A DNA stretch of 64,000 nt. It comes from Phallusia mammillata (Eukaryota). The notes under the pieces are model-generated. The model saw nothing but the letters and a program-made list of their open reading frames with translations, was not told where the DNA came from and did not search any database. The stretch spans positions 11,346,001-11,410,000 of the forward strand of contig OZ281494.1 in the NCBI GenBank assembly GCA_965637545.1. Direction: 5' to 3'. Position numbers and translations under genes: made by a program. Shown here in pieces: positions 21,311 through 60,600 of the stretch (its first letter is position 1; each line of letters starts with the position of its first letter).

Positions 21311-21645
21311 GTATATCTAAACATGAAATAATCCAATTTAATGTAATATATTAGCCAAAATACAACATATATGAAAGTTTTAATTATAAATTGCTCTATA
21401 CTAGATGGTAAAAAAGCTTACTTCTTCCTTATCATCACTCTATTTTTTTTGTTACAGTTATAACATTGAGACATTTGTGGTTATCTGGGTGGAACATTTG
21501 TAGGCTTATACTGTTCCAATGGTCATTACAAACGTTACAAAAACTATCTAGATTTTATAGCCATCATATAGATCCAAAATTTTACATCTAGACTTAACCA
21601 AAACCGTCCAGACTTAGCTATAAAATATCTCGAGTGGCAGTCCTA
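21311..21645 (-). mobile_element. Partial copy of the hAT MITE at 53358-53767
   Basis: Reverse-complement similarity over ~330 bp to 53358-53680; ends in AGTGGCAGTCCTA (TIR-like). Confidence 0.8.
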
Positions 21646-51605: not shown

Positions 51606-53090
51606 GTCTACATTCTACAGGCAGTCAGAATAAAGATTACATATTGTCTGGGTGTTGGTTATTACCCATTGATAAATTAATCATTTCTCCAACCAATTAG
51701 AACTTGGTTGTCGAATACAGTAGTACAAACATTTTTTTTTTCTTGTATGATATTTACCACAAATGACATTTGAAGATAGTTTATATAATGGAAGCTGTTT
51801 TTATGCATGCTGAGTGCAGATTTTTTTCTTGGTACTATTGGGTTATTTTTACATTTTGTGAGGAAGACTCAGTTAAGGTTTAATTAACATCAGGAGCTAA
51901 ATATACCAATAACTTGAGGTTTTTGTTCTAATTGACAAACCTGCCACATCTTTCAGCAAATGTGTTTTTGGTATTTTTGTTGGTAAAAACCTTCTCACTA
52001 CGGTCAAATTTTACTGTACCTATTTCAATCAAATTGTATACTTTCAGTTTAATATTGTAATAAAAATAAATATTCCTTATTTTCTTTCTGAAGTTTTTGA
52101 AAAACTGATGTTTGTTTATTGATTCATTTACAATACAATTTCAAAATCAATATGATTACCTAATTTGCCTTTTTAATGACAGTCACAGGCTTGTACTCCA
52201 TATAACTAAAGGACTCATATTTTATGTGTGTTTAATTTATGAATAAAACAGCCTTTTGCAATGCACTGGCACAAACAGTAAAATGTTACAAAACAGAAAT
52301 GTGAAAGAGAATGTGAAACATGGATTTTTTTTGTTTAAAACAAAAATATGGCTTCTGTAATTACAATTGTATGATTAAATGCTTTTTTAAGAAAATCGCA
52401 AACATGTTTGCTTCAAACTAGCCAGTAAACTGTGTTTTATGTTAGGATATTAATGCATGATCAAAACATTGTGTATGGTGTAGTAGGTTCTGGGTGGAGT
52501 TTATACCAAAAATAAAAAGGCATTTGCACAGCTTTGTGGTCTTCATTTCTCAGAAAAAGTTTCCATTTAAAAAAGGAGAACAGTTCCGTTTTGTTAGTCA
52601 TTTAAGTCGCAATATGGCTGGGTCTCCCAACTGTGTTAAAAATTCGATGTTGAATAAAATAGTTCGAGTACATATATTAAAAAAACAGGACAGTGAAGTT
52701 CACGAGTAGGAGCAAAACTTCATCAGAATCAACCCTAACATTGAATCTTTTATATGGGAGTGTTTATACGCATTTAATGTTTAATAAGTACCTCAAACTC
52801 CTTTTGAGAGCGTACACAATATAACTTACCTACCTAAAACCAAGAACACAAACTGGCGCCAGTTTGTTTACAACGGTATGTGACGTCATAATGCGTACAT
52901 TTTTATTCATGGTAGTCAGGCTGCATTCCTTGGAAAAAAGTGCTTACCAATGTATTGAAAATATGATTTCTTCACTGCGTAAAAAAACTTCACGCTTGGT
53001 AAGTCACGAGTCACGACTTCAGATGAATTGATTGTTTACTCACGAGTGCAACAGGGGTTGTGACTTTTTCGTGACACTTGTCACAGTTTG

Positions 53091-53185
53091 TGACAGGCGT
53101 CAATGACAGGGCTGGGGTGTCACCAAATCAGTGACAGGGCGTCATTAAATCAGTGACAGGGCATTACTAAATCAGTGACAGGGCG
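53091..53185 (+). repeat. Left subterminal array (~5 units of TGACAGGGCGTCA-like motif)
   Basis: Units at 53091, 53104, 53132, 53154, 53176; the last three have 22-bp spacing. Confidence 0.85.
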
Positions 53186-53357
53186 ATTTTGCTATAGTTA
53201 AGTGTGCAAAACGAGCCATGTGTTTGTAATTTTCGTCGTATGTTCCGAATTTAGTGCGAAAGGCAGAAAAAAATTGTCCGTAGTAGTATGATGTTACTTT
53301 ATGAAGTTTAGTTTATTCGCGCTCTTCTACGGAAGGTAGAGTGAAACACCTTGATTT

Positions 53358-53767
53358 AAGGGCTACCACTCTAGATATTTTATAGCTAGATCTAGAAAGT
53401 TTGGGTTAAGCCTAGATGTAAAATTTAGGATCTAGATGATGGCTATAAATTCTAGATAGTTTTTGTAACGTTTGTAAAGATCATGGGAACAGTACAAGCT
53501 CACAAATGTTCCACCCAGACCACATTATAACTGTAACAGAAAAATAGAGTGATGAAAAGGAAGAAGTAAGCTTCTTTAGCATCAAATATAGATCAATTTA
53601 TATTAAAAACCTTCATATGCGTTGTTGTTTGGCTAATATATTACATTAAATTGGATTCTTTTATGTTTAGTTAGATATATTTTTGGATGTTTTGTTTTTC
53701 AATCTAAATGATTCGAGATATATATTTAAAACTGGATTATTTCATTCAAACCAAAGTGGCAGCCCTG
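53358..53767. mobile_element. hAT MITE nested in the 4.2-kb element
   Basis: TIR AAGGGCTACCACT / AGTGGCAGCCCTG; perfect TSD CTTGATTT (53350-53357; 53768-53775). Confidence 0.88.
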
Positions 53768-55124
53768 CTTGATTTCAATTAGTCAGCCACTACTGCAAAC
53801 CATACTAAGAAGCAACAGGACTAAATCCATGGATAATTATAAAAAATACTTCCCAAACATAAGCAATTACATCTTAAAATTGTAAAATGTCGTGCAATAT
53901 TTCGTGCTTATGACTTTAATAAGGCATTTGTTAAATCTTGAAAAATTGCAAGCAGCAAAGGTAAGTGTGTTTTTTACAATTTTTGAACTTTCATTGTCTG
54001 CCAGGCAGTCTGACGAGCTCTAACAGGGCGAAAAAGTTCAATCACTTATTTTTAGTCACTTTGTTTATTATTTAAATATGTCTAAGCTCTGTGGTGTGTC
54101 ACATTGTGATATCTGATTGCCATATTTAATTAACAGTATGAATGTTACTTGCAAAAAAAGAGGAGCTCATCTGAGTTTCCAAACAATACAATACTTTTTA
54201 CACATGTAGATTGGACCAACACATTTAGCTGTTTGAAAACAGTAGATTGTTCATGTTTTTTGGTTTATTTCTTGGGAGAAAGCCATCAACATTTAAAGAT
54301 TGGAAACCTATTAACAGTAAACAATATTAAGAAAGTATTAGGCAACTACCAGCACAAAAGAAAGCGATTCAATACTGGTTCTAACAGACTTGGAGGAGTA
54401 AAACATTTGTTTTGTTTGGTGTTTTAACTAATTTCTTAGTTATCCTTTTTTTGGGATTCATCTTTGCTTATACACTTTATCCACCTTCCTTTTTATTTCA
54501 TTTTTGTAACTGACTCCACACAATGTTTAAACTGATCTTATTTAGATCTGATTGATTCAACAACAAGCAACAGAAGTATCTGTAAAATAGTAAAAAAATG
54601 ACACAGTATTACCATTGTATATTTTTGTTACAAAACATTGGTCAGAAAACAACCAGCCACTCTTGTGATTGTTTTCATTAATTAAAAGTATTTGCTAATC
54701 GGTTGTTTGAAGGGTTACAAGAAAAACATAAGAATAATCCTTAAAGGTTGCTGAATTTGTTAAACACAACCTTAAAAAAACGTACCCTAATACCCTAGTA
54801 TTGTTTTCTAGTTCGAGAAGAGCACTGCTTCATTACAGGAATAAAATTGGTCAAAAAAGTTAGATGAATCCGGTAAGACCATTAAATATTTTTCATTTTT
54901 AAGCTTTAAAAGCAATTCTAGTGATGCTGCTAATCATTCATAATATCATTTTATTTTAGACAGTCTTCTTTAGCTATGTAGCCAATGTGATTAGAAAATA
55001 GGTAAGTTTTTTTTTTGTTTTAGACAGCTTTTTTTGTTCACTTTATACATAATTAATTTTGATATAGTGCACAAAATGTTAAAACAATGGTAAAAGCATA
55101 ATTTTTTTTTATCACGTGTACATA

Positions 55125-55270
55125 AAAACTGTGTGCTTATCTACATGTAAAACTTTTGTGAGCAGATTGGATGTGACAGTTGCAGATCATGTCATCACAT
55201 CAAATGTGTGGGAATCAACACCTCTAAGCTTGGAATAATTCAGTCTTGGCAATGTCCTGTTTGCTTAAAA
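55125..55270 (+). pseudogene. PHD-finger coding relic
   Basis: 55166-55270 reads IGCDSCRSCHHIKCVGINTSKLGIIQSWQCPVCLK (CxxC-x4-H-xx-C ... W-x-CxxC); the upstream CLSTC segment is in another frame. Confidence 0.75.
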
Positions 55271-55980
55271 TTTGTGATATTATGGGTCCCCTAAAGGATG
55301 CACATTTTGATTTTACCCAATTTGTGTTTTTTCCCTGAAGTTTTTTCGCAGCAGATTGTGGATATGGTCATGTAGATAGACATTTGTCTTGACAGCTCCA
55401 GTATTTAAGCCACAGGCCACTAAAGTTTAAAAACATTTCTCATAATCCGACGCACCACAAACAACGAGTTTCTGTGATGTTGTAGGGATATAAAGGCAAC
55501 CAAAAATGTGTTGCAAGTGTTACTTGCATTCATTTGGGCTGGTTATTTTGGCAGTTTTAACAGCCTTAAACAATAACCAATTGGGGTTTAATTTTAAAGG
55601 ACTGTTGATTGGCTGATTGTGGTTTGTTATTTTATTATTATGCACATAGTAACCCGTTACTAACCTGCTTCCCCCAAAGATGGGTGTTTTTTTTACATTT
55701 TGATGTGTCAATTGTTGTGTTTTACCCAATGCTCTCACTATTTCCCTTTTCTTTTCTTATTTACTTATAATGCATTGTCACATGAGTATTAATCGATACA
55801 CTGACAGCTAGAGAATATGGTGCGCTTGCTTAGATTTTTAAGTTCTTTATCACATCTAGTCTTTATGTTAGGCATTCATAAATTTGTTGTTTTTTGTTTA
55901 ATAATAAAAGTTGTCTGAAATATTTTTTCATGCTTTATGATTACTGAAGAAGTTTTTGTAACAACAATATTGCCCTAACA

Positions 55981-56910
55981 TTTTTAATAAGTTCCTGAAT
56001 ATCATTGTAGTCCTGGGACCGTTGGCGCATTTTCTCTATCTATCTTAATCCTCTGCCAGTCCTATGCAGTTCGTTCTGGGTCTCCCCCGTGTCTTCTCAT
56101 GACCTTTAACAGTCCTGTGCATGATTCCATATCACATGGCCGAACCGTTGCTACTTTCGTCTCCATGTCACTTCTTCATTGAGACTGCTTCCAGTTGTTC
56201 ACCTTCCATTGTAATGTCTATGTCGCTCTCTTTATCATTTTGCCTTGACCTTACCATGATCTTGCTTTTTTCACTTCTTATCTCCATTCCATACCTTCTC
56301 ATTGTATTGTCCAATGTCAGTAAGTTTCTTACCACTCTGTAATGAATTTGTCCTGCCACTGACACTGTTTCCTCAAAATCTTCCATTGGTTCCATCATTA
56401 TGTGCTCTAATAATATATTGAACAAGATAAGCGACAGCATACACTCTTGACATACTGCAACCAAAGTGCACTTCTGTGGGTTGTCACACATTTCTGGCCG
56501 TATTATACAGTGCTTTGATCAGAAAGATCAGGTGGAGCCTGATACCATGTTTCACCTTCATACTCTACAGAGCTTTTCTCCAAACTCTGCTGGTGGTGAT
56601 GAAGTTCTTGATGTTGGTCCAAATTTTTCACCCAGTATTCAAACTGTTAGGTTGTGCTGGGTCATCCACAGAAACTGGTATGAAGAAAACCTAGTATTCA
56701 AACTGAAGAACAAGCTTCTTCATATAGGAAGTTTCTATCATATGTATTCATGATCTCTTGTGTTTTCCAGGGTGCTTTCTGGTTCTATAGCTATTCCCAA
56801 AGTTTCCTCTGTGGTCGCATTCATGCGTTTAGAGAACTCAGATGTTAGTTCTGGCAACAATGCTTAAAATCTGCCTTTAATCTTTATTTCAAACCTCTCT
56901 CTGCAACCTG
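55981..56910 (-). mobile_element. 5'-truncated, internally deleted non-LTR retrotransposon (RTE-like LINE) relic
   Basis: Minus ORF 56168-56491 has RT-like QECMLSLILFNILLEHIM...TVSVAG and YGMEIRSEKSKIMV...ITMEGEQLEAV; C-terminal RGRPR-like motif and short A-tail near 55981. Confidence 0.85.
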
Positions 56911-56956
56911 GCTCTTTCAGACGACAAAGCAAAAAGACTGTTTTTTCGAAAATTAT

Positions 56957-57215
56957 AAATCAGTGACAAGGCGTCATTTAATCATTGACAGGACGCTAGT
57001 GAATCAGTGACAGGGTGTCAAAATCAATGACAGGGCGTCAGTGAATCTGTGACAGGGTGTCAAAATCAGTGACAGGGTGTCAATAAATCTGTGACAGGGT
57101 GTCAGTAAATCTGTGACAGGGTGTCAGTAAATCTGTGACAGGGCGTCATTCAATCAGTGACAGGGTGTCAATAAATCTGTGACAGGGTGTCAGTAAATCT
57201 GTGACAGGGTGTCAG
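56957..57215 (+). repeat. Right subterminal array: 12 units of AAATC(T/A)GTGACAGGG(T/C)GTCA(G/A)T, period 22 bp (two at 20)
   Basis: TGACA-N3-(T/C)GTCA cores at 56964, 56986, 57008, 57028, 57050, 57070, 57092, 57114, 57136, 57158, 57180, 57202. Confidence 0.95.
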
Positions 57216-57656
57216 TGTGTACCTGACACCCTGTCATTGACAGGCGATAGGTGGCAGCCTGTCACTAAATTGTCACAACCCCGTCTCCACGAGTGTGTGA
57301 TGTCAGATTGTCAGTGATGAAAAATTCCCTGCTGTAAAATGTTATTTATTTAACATTTTATAGGTGGGGCAATGACGTTTCAGGCCAGGGCTATAGTCGA
57401 CATGAAGCCCAAGTTGTGAAAGTGTTTTTATGCAATGCATGCAATTATTAAGAAAATGTATCAACTAAAATATGCATAATGATCTGCCAAACTGTTCTGA
57501 CTAAATATAAATGTTATTTTTTCAGAGTTTTTTTTATATGTTGCTGGATAAGTACTTATGTAATACAAAAGTATTGGAAAGTCATGGCTCCTAATTGCCC
57601 TACCAGTGAAACATAACAACATTTTTATGCACATGTTTGGCATAGCAAACTGAACA

Positions 57657-60600
57657 ATGAATTTTGCCAAACATGTTTTGGTAATGCTTGTGCTGTTCAT
57701 TAGTGCAAAGCATTCAAGTTCATTAGACACATCACATCCCGGACAACTACTTAATGGTGAAGTATTTCCTCTGGATAAAAGAAAATCTTCTGAAGTTACA
57801 CAACAATTGGGGGATACACCCATTTCTTATTCAGACAAAGGGTTGCACAATGCTAATGAAAACACATCAATTCATGTTTCTGAAATTCCGAATGAATATA
57901 TTGTTGTGTTTGATGGTTATTACACTCAGTCTGATCGGAAGAATTATGTTGAAGAAGCAATGCAGTCCATGTACATCAGTGATAAGCAATGGGGAATTAT
58001 GCCTCGTTTCAATCCTGCACAAAAGTTTCCAAGTGATTTTGATATTCTTCAAGTTCATCCAAAGATTAAGGCCAAGGCATGTAACAACTTTCACAGCACT
58101 ATGTGTGTCACTAAAAGATATGCTATTTTGAATATTTTTAGCAGGAGATAGTTTCTGACTTCTTATGAGTAGACAATTTTCTTTTTTTCCACAGGACATT
58201 TTGACCAAGTTAACTCACCACCGAATCAAAAGCATATCTACCCAGAAACTGGTTCACTGCAATATGTTGAGCTTTAATGAGAATGATGCCAGACCAGACA
58301 TACAAAATACCAATGAATCACATTTGATACGAAAATCACGCCAACTTTCTGTAAACAATGAACGACACATGAACAAATTATCACTGAAGTCCCACTCCAG
58401 AGCACCACTGAAGGCTATTCCGAAACAGGGGCAAATCACACAGGTATGGTATAGCAGATTTTGCTGAAAACCTTGGAAAGTTGGATATTTTTGAAGGTGA
58501 AAAACTGTATGGCTTAATAATGGTGTGTCCACATTTTGAGTATTGTCTACTTTGATACTTTTTATGGGTCCCCTTCCCTGAAGGGGACACATATTGTTTT
58601 TGTCTATATATTTTTTTTCTTTCTAACGCAGATTTGTTCCCACGTTTTGGTCAAGAAAGGATGGTTCAAACTTTTTCAAATTTACACACATTAAAGATAT
58701 TGGTCTAAAGATGGTCCATGTAAATTTTGACCCCGTTTGATCCCCCGGTTCACCCACAGCCCCCCAAAACGTGAAATTTTTAGCGCGGCTATTGTTCCCA
58801 CGTTTTGGTCAAGAAAGAATGGTTCAAACTTTTTCAAATTTACACACATTGCAGATATTGGTCTAAAGATGGTCCATGTGAATTTTGACCCCGTATTACC
58901 CAGAGGTTCACCCATAGGCCCCCGAAACATAAATGTGTCTAACGCCCGTTTGGTCAAGAAAGACACTGTAGGCAGAAGTACCAAGAGAGTAACTCACTGG
59001 TTTACGATAGCGGGAGGGCTCAGCTTGACGTCGGACAGACGTTTTACGAGACGTCGTTTCAGTGATTAGAAATCAGCTGTTTTGCACAGCAATGCTATGT
59101 CGTTTTATTAAGTGGTCACTCACATTTTCAGTTTTGACGAAGGTTTTACACCTATGACGTGATTTAAACCTAATAACCGTGCTTCGGTTTTGTATATGTC
59201 AAGAAAAACTTTGTTAATAAAAGTTAAGATGAAAAAATTAACTTGAGTTTTGCCAAATAATTGTTTTTTTAAATGCTCGTTGTCAGGTTGGCTGCCGCAT
59301 GATCACGGGTTACTTAAGGTCAACTAGTCGGTATTACAAACACAGCTCAGAACTTTCTTCATAACGTAGCGTTTTTTTGACAATTAATTAAGGAGTCAAT
59401 ACTCAAGGCATGTATAAATTAGGCTTAACAGTATCGTTGAACACGAATGACGGCGTGCTATTGAAAACGGTGTCAAAAGGTCAAACAGTCGTTTGGCGTG
59501 TGCACCCTGAGAGGTTACTACTGGTCAATGGTACTCGTTTTGCGAAACAAAGTTAAATGAAAAACAATTACTTATGTATACACTTGTAGCAAATTGCTTT
59601 TTAATTTAAAGTGTCTGTAACACAACTGTTACAGCTTTCTAAAAAAATTGTGTTCAAAACCCGACCTTGGAGGACTATATCTGGGTCAAAGCAAGAGATT
59701 AGATTTAAGTCTTTGTTACGTTTTTTTAATTTTGTAATTACATGACAATAATAGTGCAAAAAGAATACGAACAATTTTTTTTTATTGTTGGGTTAATGCT
59801 TTCTAAAAATTTGTCCTTAAGAATGTAAAAATCACCGCAACATTTGTTTACTGTAAATCCGCACAAACGCGCGTGTGGGGACCCATCAGTTTTTGTTTAC
59901 AAAAACAATCATATGTGTAGATCAAATGATGTGTATAGTTAATTAGTAAATATCGTATAGAATATATAAAATGGAAGTATATCAGAAAGCCACTCTTCTA
60001 GTTTCAAATGTAAAAAAACATCGATTTTGAGTGCCTAAACTGCCCTAAAAGATGGACATTTGGACCCCCTCTGTTGCAACAGTTAATAAATATTTGCTTA
60101 AGATATAAAACAACCTTTCTCGTGTTGCAGTTACTCCAAGCGCCTCGCTTATGGGAATCTGGATATACAGGCAAAGGTGTCAATGTTGCAATATTTGACA
60201 CCGGCCTACCTGTCAATCATCCTCACTTTAAAAATATCAAGGAAAGAACAGATTGGACAGATGAAAAAACTGCTGATGACGGTTTGGGACATGGCACTTT
60301 CGTTGCCAGTGTTATTGGTGGTTCATACCAGGACTGCCCTGGTCTTGCACCTGATGCAGATTTGTTCATTTTTCGGGTTTTTACTAATAATCAGGTAGTT
60401 TAATGGTACCTTCTGAATTATATATTTAACACCTAAGAATTTGCCAAATTTTACACCTTTTTTGGAGTCAGAAATGTCAACCTTGGGCATTCTAATGTTA
60501 AGTAAGCTATTGTTTGTAGTGTAGCCATTTTCTCTCAGAATTTAGCGCTTTTTATTGGTGAACAGGATGTCATGAATTATTAACCTACCACACTACACCA

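What the first reader, a model, noticed from the sequence alone, without database searches (positions are those of the whole stretch)
53041..57295. Unclassified 4.2-kb transposon with phased palindromic arrays and a PHD-finger relic
Seen: 8-bp direct repeat CACGAGTG, imperfect ~65-bp inverted ends, asymmetric arrays (~5 left, 12 right) of TGACA-GGG-TGTCA at a 22-bp period (about two helical turns), multi-exon coding relics including a PHD finger, plus nested MITE and LINE. The termini do not match the superfamily signatures I can recall. Inference: the arrays are transposase-binding sites of a spliced, chromatin-reading (PHD) transposase family. Established: TGACAG/TGTCA is also the TALE homeodomain (Meis/TGIF/Pknox) site, so a 12-site array ~450 bp upstream of the MBTPS1 ATG could act as a ready-made cis-element.
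Basis: partly seen in the sequence, partly recalled or inferred. Interest (0 to 1): 0.7.

Follow-up and report, generated by a model that had tools for sequence, protein, structure and literature searches.

The report
Recently mobile non-autonomous DNA transposon
This is a real, recently jumping but enzyme-less DNA transposon sitting about 240 bases upstream of the start of a sea-squirt MBTPS1 transcript; it looks most like a stripped-down Mutator/Rehavkus-type element rather than a new kind, although the enzyme that moves it was not found.

Summary
Window 53049-57287 is a 4,239-bp element with an 8-bp duplication (CACGAGTG), imperfect ~63-bp inverted ends and 22-bp repeat arrays (about 5 left, 12 right).

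- **Mobility:** ten complete copies in this genome each have a different perfect 8-bp duplication. Six 4.2-kb copies are 99.1-99.98% identical, so the family moved recently.
- **Family:** a 6.3-kb sister subfamily has at least 22 copies. A ~130-kb tandem array of truncated 3.7-kb units also exists.
- **Coding content:** no copy encodes a transposase. The only domains are a decayed PHD exon (spliced into an RNA-like contig), a weak reverse-transcriptase relic and, in the sister subfamily, zf-UBP exons 89% identical to one other locus (probable host-gene capture).
- **MITE and LINE:** they belong to the family's master copy. They did not insert here.
- **Classification:** terminal motif, subterminal repeats, a minisatellite before the 3' end, a PHD finger and carried gene fragments match published Rehavkus and foldback Mutator elements. 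Earlier notes of this scan report such elements in this genome. Rehavkus makes 9-bp duplications, not 8, and no DDE relic links them, so membership is unproven. P and hAT remain rivals.
- **TALE-site enhancer idea:** untested.

The parts
53041..53048 (.). left copy of the 8-bp target-site duplication CACGAGTG
53049..53111 (+). left terminal inverted repeat: CAACA + GGGGTTGTGAC, then GTGACA and GTCAATGACAGGG blocks (imperfect, about 63 bp)
53085..53190 (+). left subterminal units (about 5, partly degenerate) of the 22-bp repeat AAATCWGTGACAGGGYGTCART; overlaps the inner part of the left inverted repeat
53359..53470 (.). short independent repeat (MITE-like) inside the element; a second copy lies at window 21533-21644 (88%); present in all 4.2-kb copies
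   Evidence: I21; loose ends at 53363 and 53458
53885..54339 (+). interior block shared with the 6.3-kb subfamily at 77-80% identity; no domain found
54844..54872 (+). 3' part of a small upstream exon (GT donor at 54873) carried by the spliced RNA-like contig; inferred from the contig's depth, not from an alignment
54960..55001 (+). 42-nt exon (AG acceptor, GTAAG donor) upstream of the PHD exon; ends in TAG in the PHD exon's reading frame
55166..55294 (+). last coding exon: C-terminal three quarters of a PHD finger (BPTF/KDM5 reader type), decayed in this subfamily (RHWYH has become RSCHH); stop codon at 55292-55294; the RNA-like contig runs on to at least 55481
56171..56863 (-). relic of a LINE (reverse-transcriptase fragment and the stretch before it), shared with the 6.3-kb subfamily
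   Evidence: RVT_1 E = 0.012, below the cut-off
56956..57216 (+). minisatellite before the right end: 12 units of 22 bp, same orientation as the left units
57224..57287 (-). right terminal inverted repeat, including one inverted unit (57224-57236) and the terminus GTCACAACCCC + GTCTC
57288..57295 (.). right copy of the 8-bp target-site duplication
57527..58074 (+). context: first exon of the MBTPS1 homologue; the 5' end of the mRNA contig is at 57527, the ATG at 57657, the first intron at 58075-58192

Best explanation
The stretch is one copy of a recently active, non-autonomous cut-and-paste DNA transposon family that must be moved in trans.

Proposed mechanism (inferred): a transposase encoded elsewhere recognises the terminal motif (GGGGTTGTGAC with its 5-nt outer flank). 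It loads cooperatively on the near-palindromic 22-bp units (TGACA-GGG-TGTCA core), excises the element and reinserts it with a staggered 8-bp cut.

The interior is cargo and debris:
- a spliced but no longer translatable transcription unit that ends in a decayed PHD-finger exon;
- a short nested repeat;
- a LINE fragment.
The 6.3-kb sister subfamily also carries intron-containing zf-UBP exons of USP44/49 type, probably copied from a host gene.

By architecture the family is most likely a derivative of a Mutator-superfamily element of the foldback/Rehavkus kind. The PHD exon is then either the last remnant of that transposase or one more captured host exon.

Shown: mobility, 8-bp duplications, the end structure, recent activity, lack of a transposase, splicing into the PHD exon.
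Inferred: binding of a transposase to the arrays, the superfamily, the origin of the PHD exon.
For: - Mobility: 10 of 10 complete copies have different perfect 8-bp duplications, and the two ends are always linked.
- Recent activity: six 4.2-kb copies are 99.12-99.98% identical.
- Family size: 102 ends match a 23-nt terminal pattern against 0 for the reversed control. All belong to the 4.2-kb or 6.3-kb subfamily, their miniature derivatives (131-354 bp) or the tandem array.
- No transposase: Pfam on all open pieces of three copies finds only PHD, zf-UBP and a weak RVT_1 match.
- Arrays: the 22-bp unit is conserved at nearly every position across 43 units of both subfamilies.
- Gene capture: the zf-UBP exon occurs in 22 sister-subfamily copies and in one further locus, C4:23008884, at 89% amino-acid identity. 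Its nearest solved structure is USP49 (E = 2.6e-16).
- Splicing: an RNA-like contig enters the PHD exon at its AG acceptor and carries 69 further upstream letters. The same run holds a spliced MBTPS1 contig.
[quoted passage not shown] Its subterminal tandem repeats can expand into satellites (PMC12581902).
- Literature fit (Aedes Muta families): they have 8-9 bp duplications, a terminal motif plus subterminal tandem repeats, and derivatives that carry host gene fragments (PMC5225508).
- Such elements exist here: MULE and Ulp1-protease domains share long open frames at several loci of this genome.
Against: - No DDE or MULE relic lies in any copy read, and no autonomous element with these ends is in the assembly.
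- All six listed Rehavkus elements make 9-bp duplications; this family made 8 bp in 10 of 10.
- The long right array is in direct, not inverted, orientation to the left units, unlike classical foldback arms.
- The PHD exon's nearest relatives are host chromatin readers, not transposases. Its best matches in this genome (62% over 34 residues at C3:13124783 and C2:5633137) are not next to any MULE or Ulp1 hit.
- An exact 8-bp duplication is more typical of hAT and P elements, and both are abundant here.
Confidence: 0.5

Rival explanations
1. It is a non-autonomous hAT element. A hAT transposase binds the subterminal TGACAGGG repeats, as the Ac transposase binds its subterminal motifs, and makes the 8-bp duplication.
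For: - The duplication is invariably 8 bp, the hAT hallmark by established knowledge.
- hAT is the most abundant superfamily here: 522 first-look candidates, including six identical copies with an intact 660-aa frame, so a hAT was active recently.
- hAT derivatives can carry gene fragments.
Against: - The termini do not follow the hAT YARNG pattern on the right end (GAGAC).
- The target lacks the nTnnnnAn pattern: T at position 2 in 8 of 32 sites and A at position 7 in 7 of 32.
- None of the listed hAT domain hits lies in a copy.
- No end of this family lies near the intact hAT copies on C1 and C2.
- Regular 22-bp tandem arrays are unusual for hAT.
Confidence: 0.18
2. It is a non-autonomous P-superfamily element. 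The arrays are multiple THAP-domain binding sites, as in the long repeat-bearing ends of Galileo.
For: - P elements make 8-bp duplications.
- P-like transposase genes with open frames of 728-744 aa exist here.
- The zebrafish Pdre2 13-bp inverted repeat contains TTGACAGG, an 8-mer also present in this element's right end (PMC10983969).
- Galileo carries many THAP sites in long repeat-bearing ends (PMC3688188, abstract seen).
Against: - The termini do not start with CAT as in P and Pdre2.
- The 8-mer match is short and could be chance.
- No P domain lies in any copy.
- Neither the PHD finger nor carried gene fragments are known features of P elements.
Confidence: 0.15
3. It belongs to a cut-and-paste lineage not yet described, whose transposase carries a C-terminal histone-reading PHD finger.
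For: - No known transposase domain could be tied to the family.
- The outer 5 nt of the two ends are not inverted repeats of each other, which is unusual.
- The terminal and array motifs were found in no paper.
Against: - Every structural feature has a precedent in Mutator/Rehavkus elements.
- Failing to find a partner is weak evidence here, because the genome could no longer be read.
Confidence: 0.1

Closest known systems
Rehavkus elements (Mutator superfamily; Repbase, summarised in PMC6446971 and PMC12581902)
   Same: - Inverted ends in the 26-412 bp range.
- A minisatellite just inside the 3' end, with variable numbers of subterminal tandem repeats.
- A PHD finger associated with the element.
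- A tendency of the repeats or units to grow into satellite arrays.
   Different: - Duplication of 8 bp here against 9 bp in all six listed Rehavkus elements.
- No transposase here.
- The PHD exon cannot be shown to derive from a transposase.
- Rehavkus was listed from arthropods and annelids; this host is a tunicate.
Muta1 and other Aedes aegypti MULEs with their non-autonomous derivatives (PMC5225508)
   Same: - Duplications of 8 bp occur.
- The ends are built from a short terminal motif plus spaced subterminal tandem repeats.
- Near-identical copies indicate recent activity.
- Derivatives share only the ends and carry varied interiors, including host gene fragments.
   Different: - Muta repeats are 9-15 bp and inverted between the two ends. 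Here the unit is 22 bp and the long right array is direct relative to the left one.
- Muta1 has its autonomous copy in the genome; none was found here.
Pack-MULE-type transduplication
   Same: The 6.3-kb subfamily carries intron-containing exons (USP44/49-type zf-UBP) that are 89% identical to one other locus and were amplified to at least 22 copies.
   Different: The parent locus was not read, so its nature as a host USP gene is inferred. For the PHD exon no close parent exists (best 62% over 34 residues).
Ac/Ds and P/KP-type autonomous/non-autonomous pairs
   Same: Internally deleted or rearranged elements that keep the ends and subterminal binding sites and are moved in trans; 8-bp duplication.
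   Different: The terminal sequences and target pattern do not fit hAT or P, and no partner was found.

Membership tests
Cut-and-paste (TIR) DNA transposon, non-autonomous | Target-site duplication of fixed length flanking linked ends at many unrelated sites | tested here: met
   10 of 10 complete copies have different perfect 8-bp duplications
Cut-and-paste (TIR) DNA transposon, non-autonomous | Terminal inverted repeats | tested here: met
   Imperfect repeat of about 63 bp with three conserved blocks; the outer 5 nt are not inverted
Cut-and-paste (TIR) DNA transposon, non-autonomous | No transposase gene of its own | tested here: met
   Pfam on all open pieces of three copies finds only PHD, zf-UBP and weak RVT_1
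Rehavkus | Minisatellite before the 3' inverted repeat | tested here: met
   12 x 22 bp at 56956-57216, directly inside the right end; feature as defined in PMC6446971
Rehavkus | PHD finger in the transposase | tested here: inconclusive
   A PHD exon is present, but no transposase is attached and its nearest relatives are host readers
Rehavkus | 9-bp target-site duplication | tested here: not met
   8 bp in 10 of 10 copies, against 9 bp in all listed Rehavkus elements
Rehavkus | MULE-related DDE transposase | tested here: not met
   No MULE domain in any copy, and none of the genome's MULE hits lies inside a copy. This is expected for a non-autonomous element, so it says little.
Mutator superfamily (MULE) in general | Duplication of 8-11 bp | tested here: met
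   8 bp; range given in PMC6446971; 8 or 9 bp for Muta1
Mutator superfamily (MULE) in general | Long ends built of a terminal motif plus subterminal tandem repeats (foldback type) | tested here: inconclusive
   The motif and repeats are present, but the long right array is direct, not inverted, relative to the left units
hAT | 8-bp duplication | tested here: met
hAT | Target pattern nTnnnnAn and termini YARNG (from established knowledge) | tested here: not met
   T at position 2 in 8 of 32 sites, A at position 7 in 7 of 32; instead G at position 8 in 23 of 32 and C at position 1 in 14 of 32. The right terminus is GAGAC.
hAT | hAT transposase (dimerisation domain PF05699) | tested here: not met
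   None of the 150 scored hits lies in a copy; none in the copies scanned
P superfamily | 8-bp duplication | tested here: met
   8 bp for P and Pdre2
P superfamily | THAP / P-type RNase H transposase | tested here: not met
   None of the PF21787 hits lies in a copy; none in the copies scanned
Merlin and KDZ/Zisupton | IS1595-type or KDZ transposase near the ends | tested here: not met
   None of the 33 hits (Merlin) or 12 hits (KDZ) lies in or beside a copy

The most novel reading that the evidence does not exclude
The family could be the non-autonomous tail of a tunicate lineage, either an 8-bp-duplicating branch of Rehavkus or something further away, whose transposase ends in an H3K4me3-reader-type PHD finger. 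That finger would steer insertions to active promoters. This copy lies about 240 bp upstream of the MBTPS1 transcript start, and insertion sites are locally richer in G+C (44% against 35%). In that case the 12-unit TGACAG array could have been adopted as a Meis/Pknox-responsive element.
Probability: 0.1. Interest if true: 0.6.

Novelty: new member of a known kind. Interest (0 to 1): 0.3.

Why it matters
- **Possible tool.** The family moved very recently (copies up to 99.98% identical) in a sea squirt, a group used for developmental genetics. Natural miniature derivatives of 131-354 bp already mark out the ends it needs. Finding its transposase would give a native, possibly still active, cut-and-paste system for this animal.
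- **Two textbook processes in one family.** The sister subfamily captured and amplified exons of a probable host gene. A truncated 3.7-kb unit grew into a tandem array of about 130 kb.
- **The gene next door.** The insertion places twelve TGACAG/TGTCA sites a few hundred bases upstream of the MBTPS1 start. Any regulatory effect is untested.

Tried and rejected
1. **An autonomous copy with the same ends.** A 23-nt terminal pattern with up to 1 mismatch gave 102 ends. All pair at 6.4 kb or less, or belong to known subfamilies. None was found.
2. **Transposase relics in the copies.** Pfam on 68 pieces of a 6.3-kb copy, 50 pieces of an older copy and 20 more pieces of the window copy found none.
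3. **Linking copies to transposase genes by position.** Own-genome searches with the hAT, P, MULE, Merlin, KDZ and Ulp1 families gave no hit inside or beside any copy. This includes the odd copy at C8:7.80 Mb.
4. **Origin of the PHD exon.**
   - The own-genome search gave a best match of 62% over 34 residues at two unread loci.
   - The search of 1.84 billion representatives returned generic readers and two LINE-type proteins.
   - The word search found no candidate.
   - The Atlas returned generic PHD clusters.
   Origin left open.
5. **Literature search for the terminal and array motifs.** Only chance primer hits.
6. **Empty-site allele.** In two DNA runs, single-copy contigs that carry the MBTPS1 flank stop matching exactly at 57288 and run on for 2.0 and 4.8 kb. 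The expected joint to 53040 was not among the listed joints. Polymorphism is therefore suggested, not shown.
7. **Fetching more of the genome.** I did not try to obtain the same letters by another tool.
8. **A guessed shared repeat** between the stretch after the PHD exon and the MBTPS1 introns. No nucleotide similarity; dropped.

The spliced transcript was read exon by exon only.

Full report
**1. Observation**

- The element spans 53049-57287 (4,239 bp). CACGAGTG flanks it at 53041-53048 and 57288-57295.
- Both ends carry GGGGTTGTGAC (2 matches in 64 kb against 0.00 expected). GTGACA and GTCAATGACAGGG follow at nearly the same offsets, which makes an imperfect inverted repeat of about 63 bp.
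- The core TGACAGGGYGTCA occurs 13 times against 0.09 expected.
- Tandem Repeats Finder reports 12.0 units of 22 bp at 56956-57216 and 3.2 units at 53115-53185.
- Over 43 units from four copies the consensus is AAATCWGTGACAGGGYGTCART, and almost every position is fixed.

Two details differ from the description.
- The left units and the long right array point the same way on the + strand. Only the outermost right-hand unit (57224-57236) is inverted.
- The outer five bases (CAACA on the left, GTCTC on the right) are not inverted copies of each other, although they are constant in all copies.

**2. It is a mobile family**

Searches of the window's own genome with either end found many copies. A 23-nt terminal pattern gave 102 matches and none for the reversed control.

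In ten complete copies the two ends are linked. Each copy is flanked by a different, perfect 8-bp duplication. From 32 left flanks the target shows G at duplication position 8 in 23 sites and C at position 1 in 14. The 20-50 bp next to the insertions hold 44% G+C against 35% in the background.

The family has these parts.
- **A 4.2-kb subfamily.** Six dispersed copies, the window's among them, are 99.12-99.98% identical. One older copy is about 94.5% identical.
- **A 6.3-kb subfamily.** It has at least 22 copies; in the left-end loci read they are about 94-100% identical to the two reference copies.
- **Miniature derivatives** of 131-354 bp.
- **A tandem array of truncated 3.72-kb units** on C3:19.56-19.65 Mb and on contig C40, with at least 35 units. 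In it the exact right terminus is joined to interior position 53537/8.

**3. What the interior holds**

No copy encodes a transposase. I scanned three sets of stop-free pieces against Pfam:
- all pieces of 38 residues or more from a 6.3-kb copy;
- all element-strand pieces of 33 residues or more from an older copy;
- the pieces of the window copy.
Only PHD, zf-UBP and a weak RVT_1 match (E = 0.012) came up.

*The 'nested' pieces.* The short repeat at 53359-53470 is an independent family with a second copy at window 21533-21644. It is present in all 4.2-kb copies. The LINE relic (56171-56863, minus strand) is shared with the 6.3-kb subfamily. Both pieces therefore predate the amplification.

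*The PHD exon.* It spans 55166-55294, has an AG acceptor and is followed by a stop. An older copy and the tandem units keep the canonical CDSCRHWYHIKCVGI core. In the window's subfamily this has become RSCHH.

*Transcription.* One run of the same species holds a spliced MBTPS1 contig, so it is at least partly RNA. That run also holds a contig that enters the PHD exon at its acceptor with 69 more letters upstream. The contig's depth reappears at 54852 and 54985, which fits two small upstream exons (about 54844-54872 and 54960-55001). The 42-nt exon ends in TAG in the PHD frame, so the unit is transcribed and spliced but is no longer a coding gene. I read it exon by exon and built no joined model.

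*The sister subfamily's cargo.* It carries three intron-separated exons of a zf-UBP domain (Pfam E = 3.3e-10). The nearest solved structure is USP49 (E = 2.6e-16). The exon occurs in 22 element copies and at one further locus, C4:23008884, with 89% identity. That locus is far from any MULE or Ulp1 hit. It is probably the host parent, so this looks like gene-fragment capture.

**4. Which superfamily?**

An 8-bp duplication allows hAT, P, Mutator, Merlin or Zisupton. Own-genome searches with their Pfam domains gave many hits, and some sit in long open frames. None lies in or beside a copy of this family. No autonomous element with these ends is in the assembly. After the genome's letters could no longer be fetched, so several informative places stayed unread.

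*Lead from the scan's earlier notes.* They report Rehavkus/NOF-type Mutator elements in this genome. These have satellite-built arms and transposases fused to a Ulp1 protease and a PHD finger, and some also carry a USP protease. I could confirm one part: MULE and Peptidase_C48 hits share single long frames, for example 945 aa at C6:6653020-6654924 and 814 aa at C1:25093692-25095635.

*Published features that fit.*
- Rehavkus differs from other MULEs by a minisatellite before the 3' inverted repeat and a PHD finger. Its inverted repeats measure 26-412 bp (PMC6446971).
- Its subterminal tandem repeats vary in number and can grow into satellites (PMC12581902).
- The Aedes Muta families make 8- or 9-bp duplications. 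Their ends combine a terminal motif with spaced subterminal tandem repeats. Their derivatives keep only the ends and carry host gene fragments (PMC5225508).

*What argues against membership.*
- All six listed Rehavkus elements make 9-bp duplications; this family made 8 bp in 10 of 10.
- The long array is direct, not inverted.
- The PHD exon cannot be tied to a transposase. Its nearest relatives among 1.84 billion proteins are BPTF- and KDM5-type readers and two LINE-type proteins. Its best matches in this genome (62% over 34 residues) sit at two unread loci away from MULE hits.

I therefore do not file the family as Rehavkus. I rate 'derivative of a foldback/Rehavkus-like Mutator element' as the most likely reading, at about one half.

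*Rivals.*
- hAT: the exact 8-bp duplication and the abundance of hAT here speak for it. The target pattern and the right terminus do not fit.
- P: the 8-bp duplication and the TTGACAGG 8-mer shared with the zebrafish Pdre2 end speak for it. The termini do not fit.
- An undescribed lineage.

**5. Mechanism**

*Shown:* cut-and-paste-type insertions with an 8-bp stagger, recent activity, dependence on a transposase supplied in trans, and conservation of the terminal motif and the 22-bp units across subfamilies whose interiors differ.

*Inferred:* the near-palindromic units are cooperative binding sites for that transposase, in line with the cited view that more terminal repeats raise excision of foldback elements.

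*The tandem array:* its junction is the exact right terminus joined to an interior site. This fits insertion of one copy into another in the same orientation, followed by unequal exchange, the route proposed for satellites born from transposons (preprint 10.1101/158386, abstract seen).

**6. The neighbouring gene**

MBTPS1 is confirmed. Its mRNA contig starts at 57527, which is 240 bp after the element's end, and no listed contig joins the element to it. TGACAG (Meis/Pknox) and TGTCA (TGIF) sites are in every unit; that these are the sites of those factors is established knowledge. Nothing here tests binding or any effect on expression.

In two DNA runs, single-copy contigs that carry the MBTPS1 flank stop matching exactly at 57288, the first base of the right duplication. 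They run on in other sequence. In a third run the contig keeps the last 29 bp of the element. This hints that the insertion is polymorphic, but the expected empty-site joint was not listed, so it stays open.

**7. Verdict**

The stretch is a real, recently active, non-autonomous DNA transposon family of ordinary design. It most resembles Mutator/Rehavkus derivatives, and its partner transposase has not been found. Earlier notes of this scan had already reported the probable parent kind (Rehavkus/NOF-type Mutator elements) elsewhere in this genome. They do not mention this family.

Novelty: a new member of a known kind. Interest: modest (0.3).

Noticed in passing
G000 C3:19,560,659-19,653,017 and contig C40 (loci L037-L060, L068, L072); junction = window 57286 joined to 53537: A tandem array of at least 35 truncated 3.72-kb units of this element, about 130 kb in all. 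The exact right terminus abuts an interior site. A young full-length 4.2-kb copy and 6.3-kb copies lie next to it. It looks like a satellite born from a transposon inserted into its own kind.
   Followed up: partly
Read-laying table 5c, run X1: window 57289 joined to 53049 with AATTGA between: A low-depth contig (3.8, against about 8-9 for single-copy sequence) joins the right end to the left end with exactly 8 letters between them (CAAATTGA), the length of one target duplication. It could be a head-to-tail pair absent from the assembly, or a circle formed by recombination between the two duplication copies.
   Followed up: no
window 52400-52940: The flank upstream of the element is itself a repeat, about 20-35 times single-copy depth in three DNA runs. 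It also lies on a contig of the RNA-like run that diverges from the window at 52948.
   Followed up: no
G000 C1:81912, C2:28617258, C4:406978, C6:14452397, C7:7170380, C8:9308229: Six hAT dimerisation-domain hits with identical scores, each in an open 660-aa frame. This looks like a very recently active autonomous hAT family.
   Followed up: no
G000 C8:7,796,393-7,802,921: An atypical copy of the 6.3-kb subfamily. Its PHD relic lies about 6.4 kb from the left end instead of 4.3 kb, it has no zf-UBP exon and no right end within one mismatch. It could not be read.
   Followed up: no
window 58075-58192: The RNA-like contig confirms the first MBTPS1 intron (118 bp) and a transcript 5' end at about 57527, which is 130 bp before the ATG.
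   Followed up: partly
loci L015/L016 (C3:19,665,300-19,668,860): Long open frames (287-339 aa) made of a repeated FHSDSSLCSYSFVHFIPTVHSV-like unit lie next to two left ends of the 6.3-kb subfamily. This is a coding-looking minisatellite of unknown nature.
   Followed up: no
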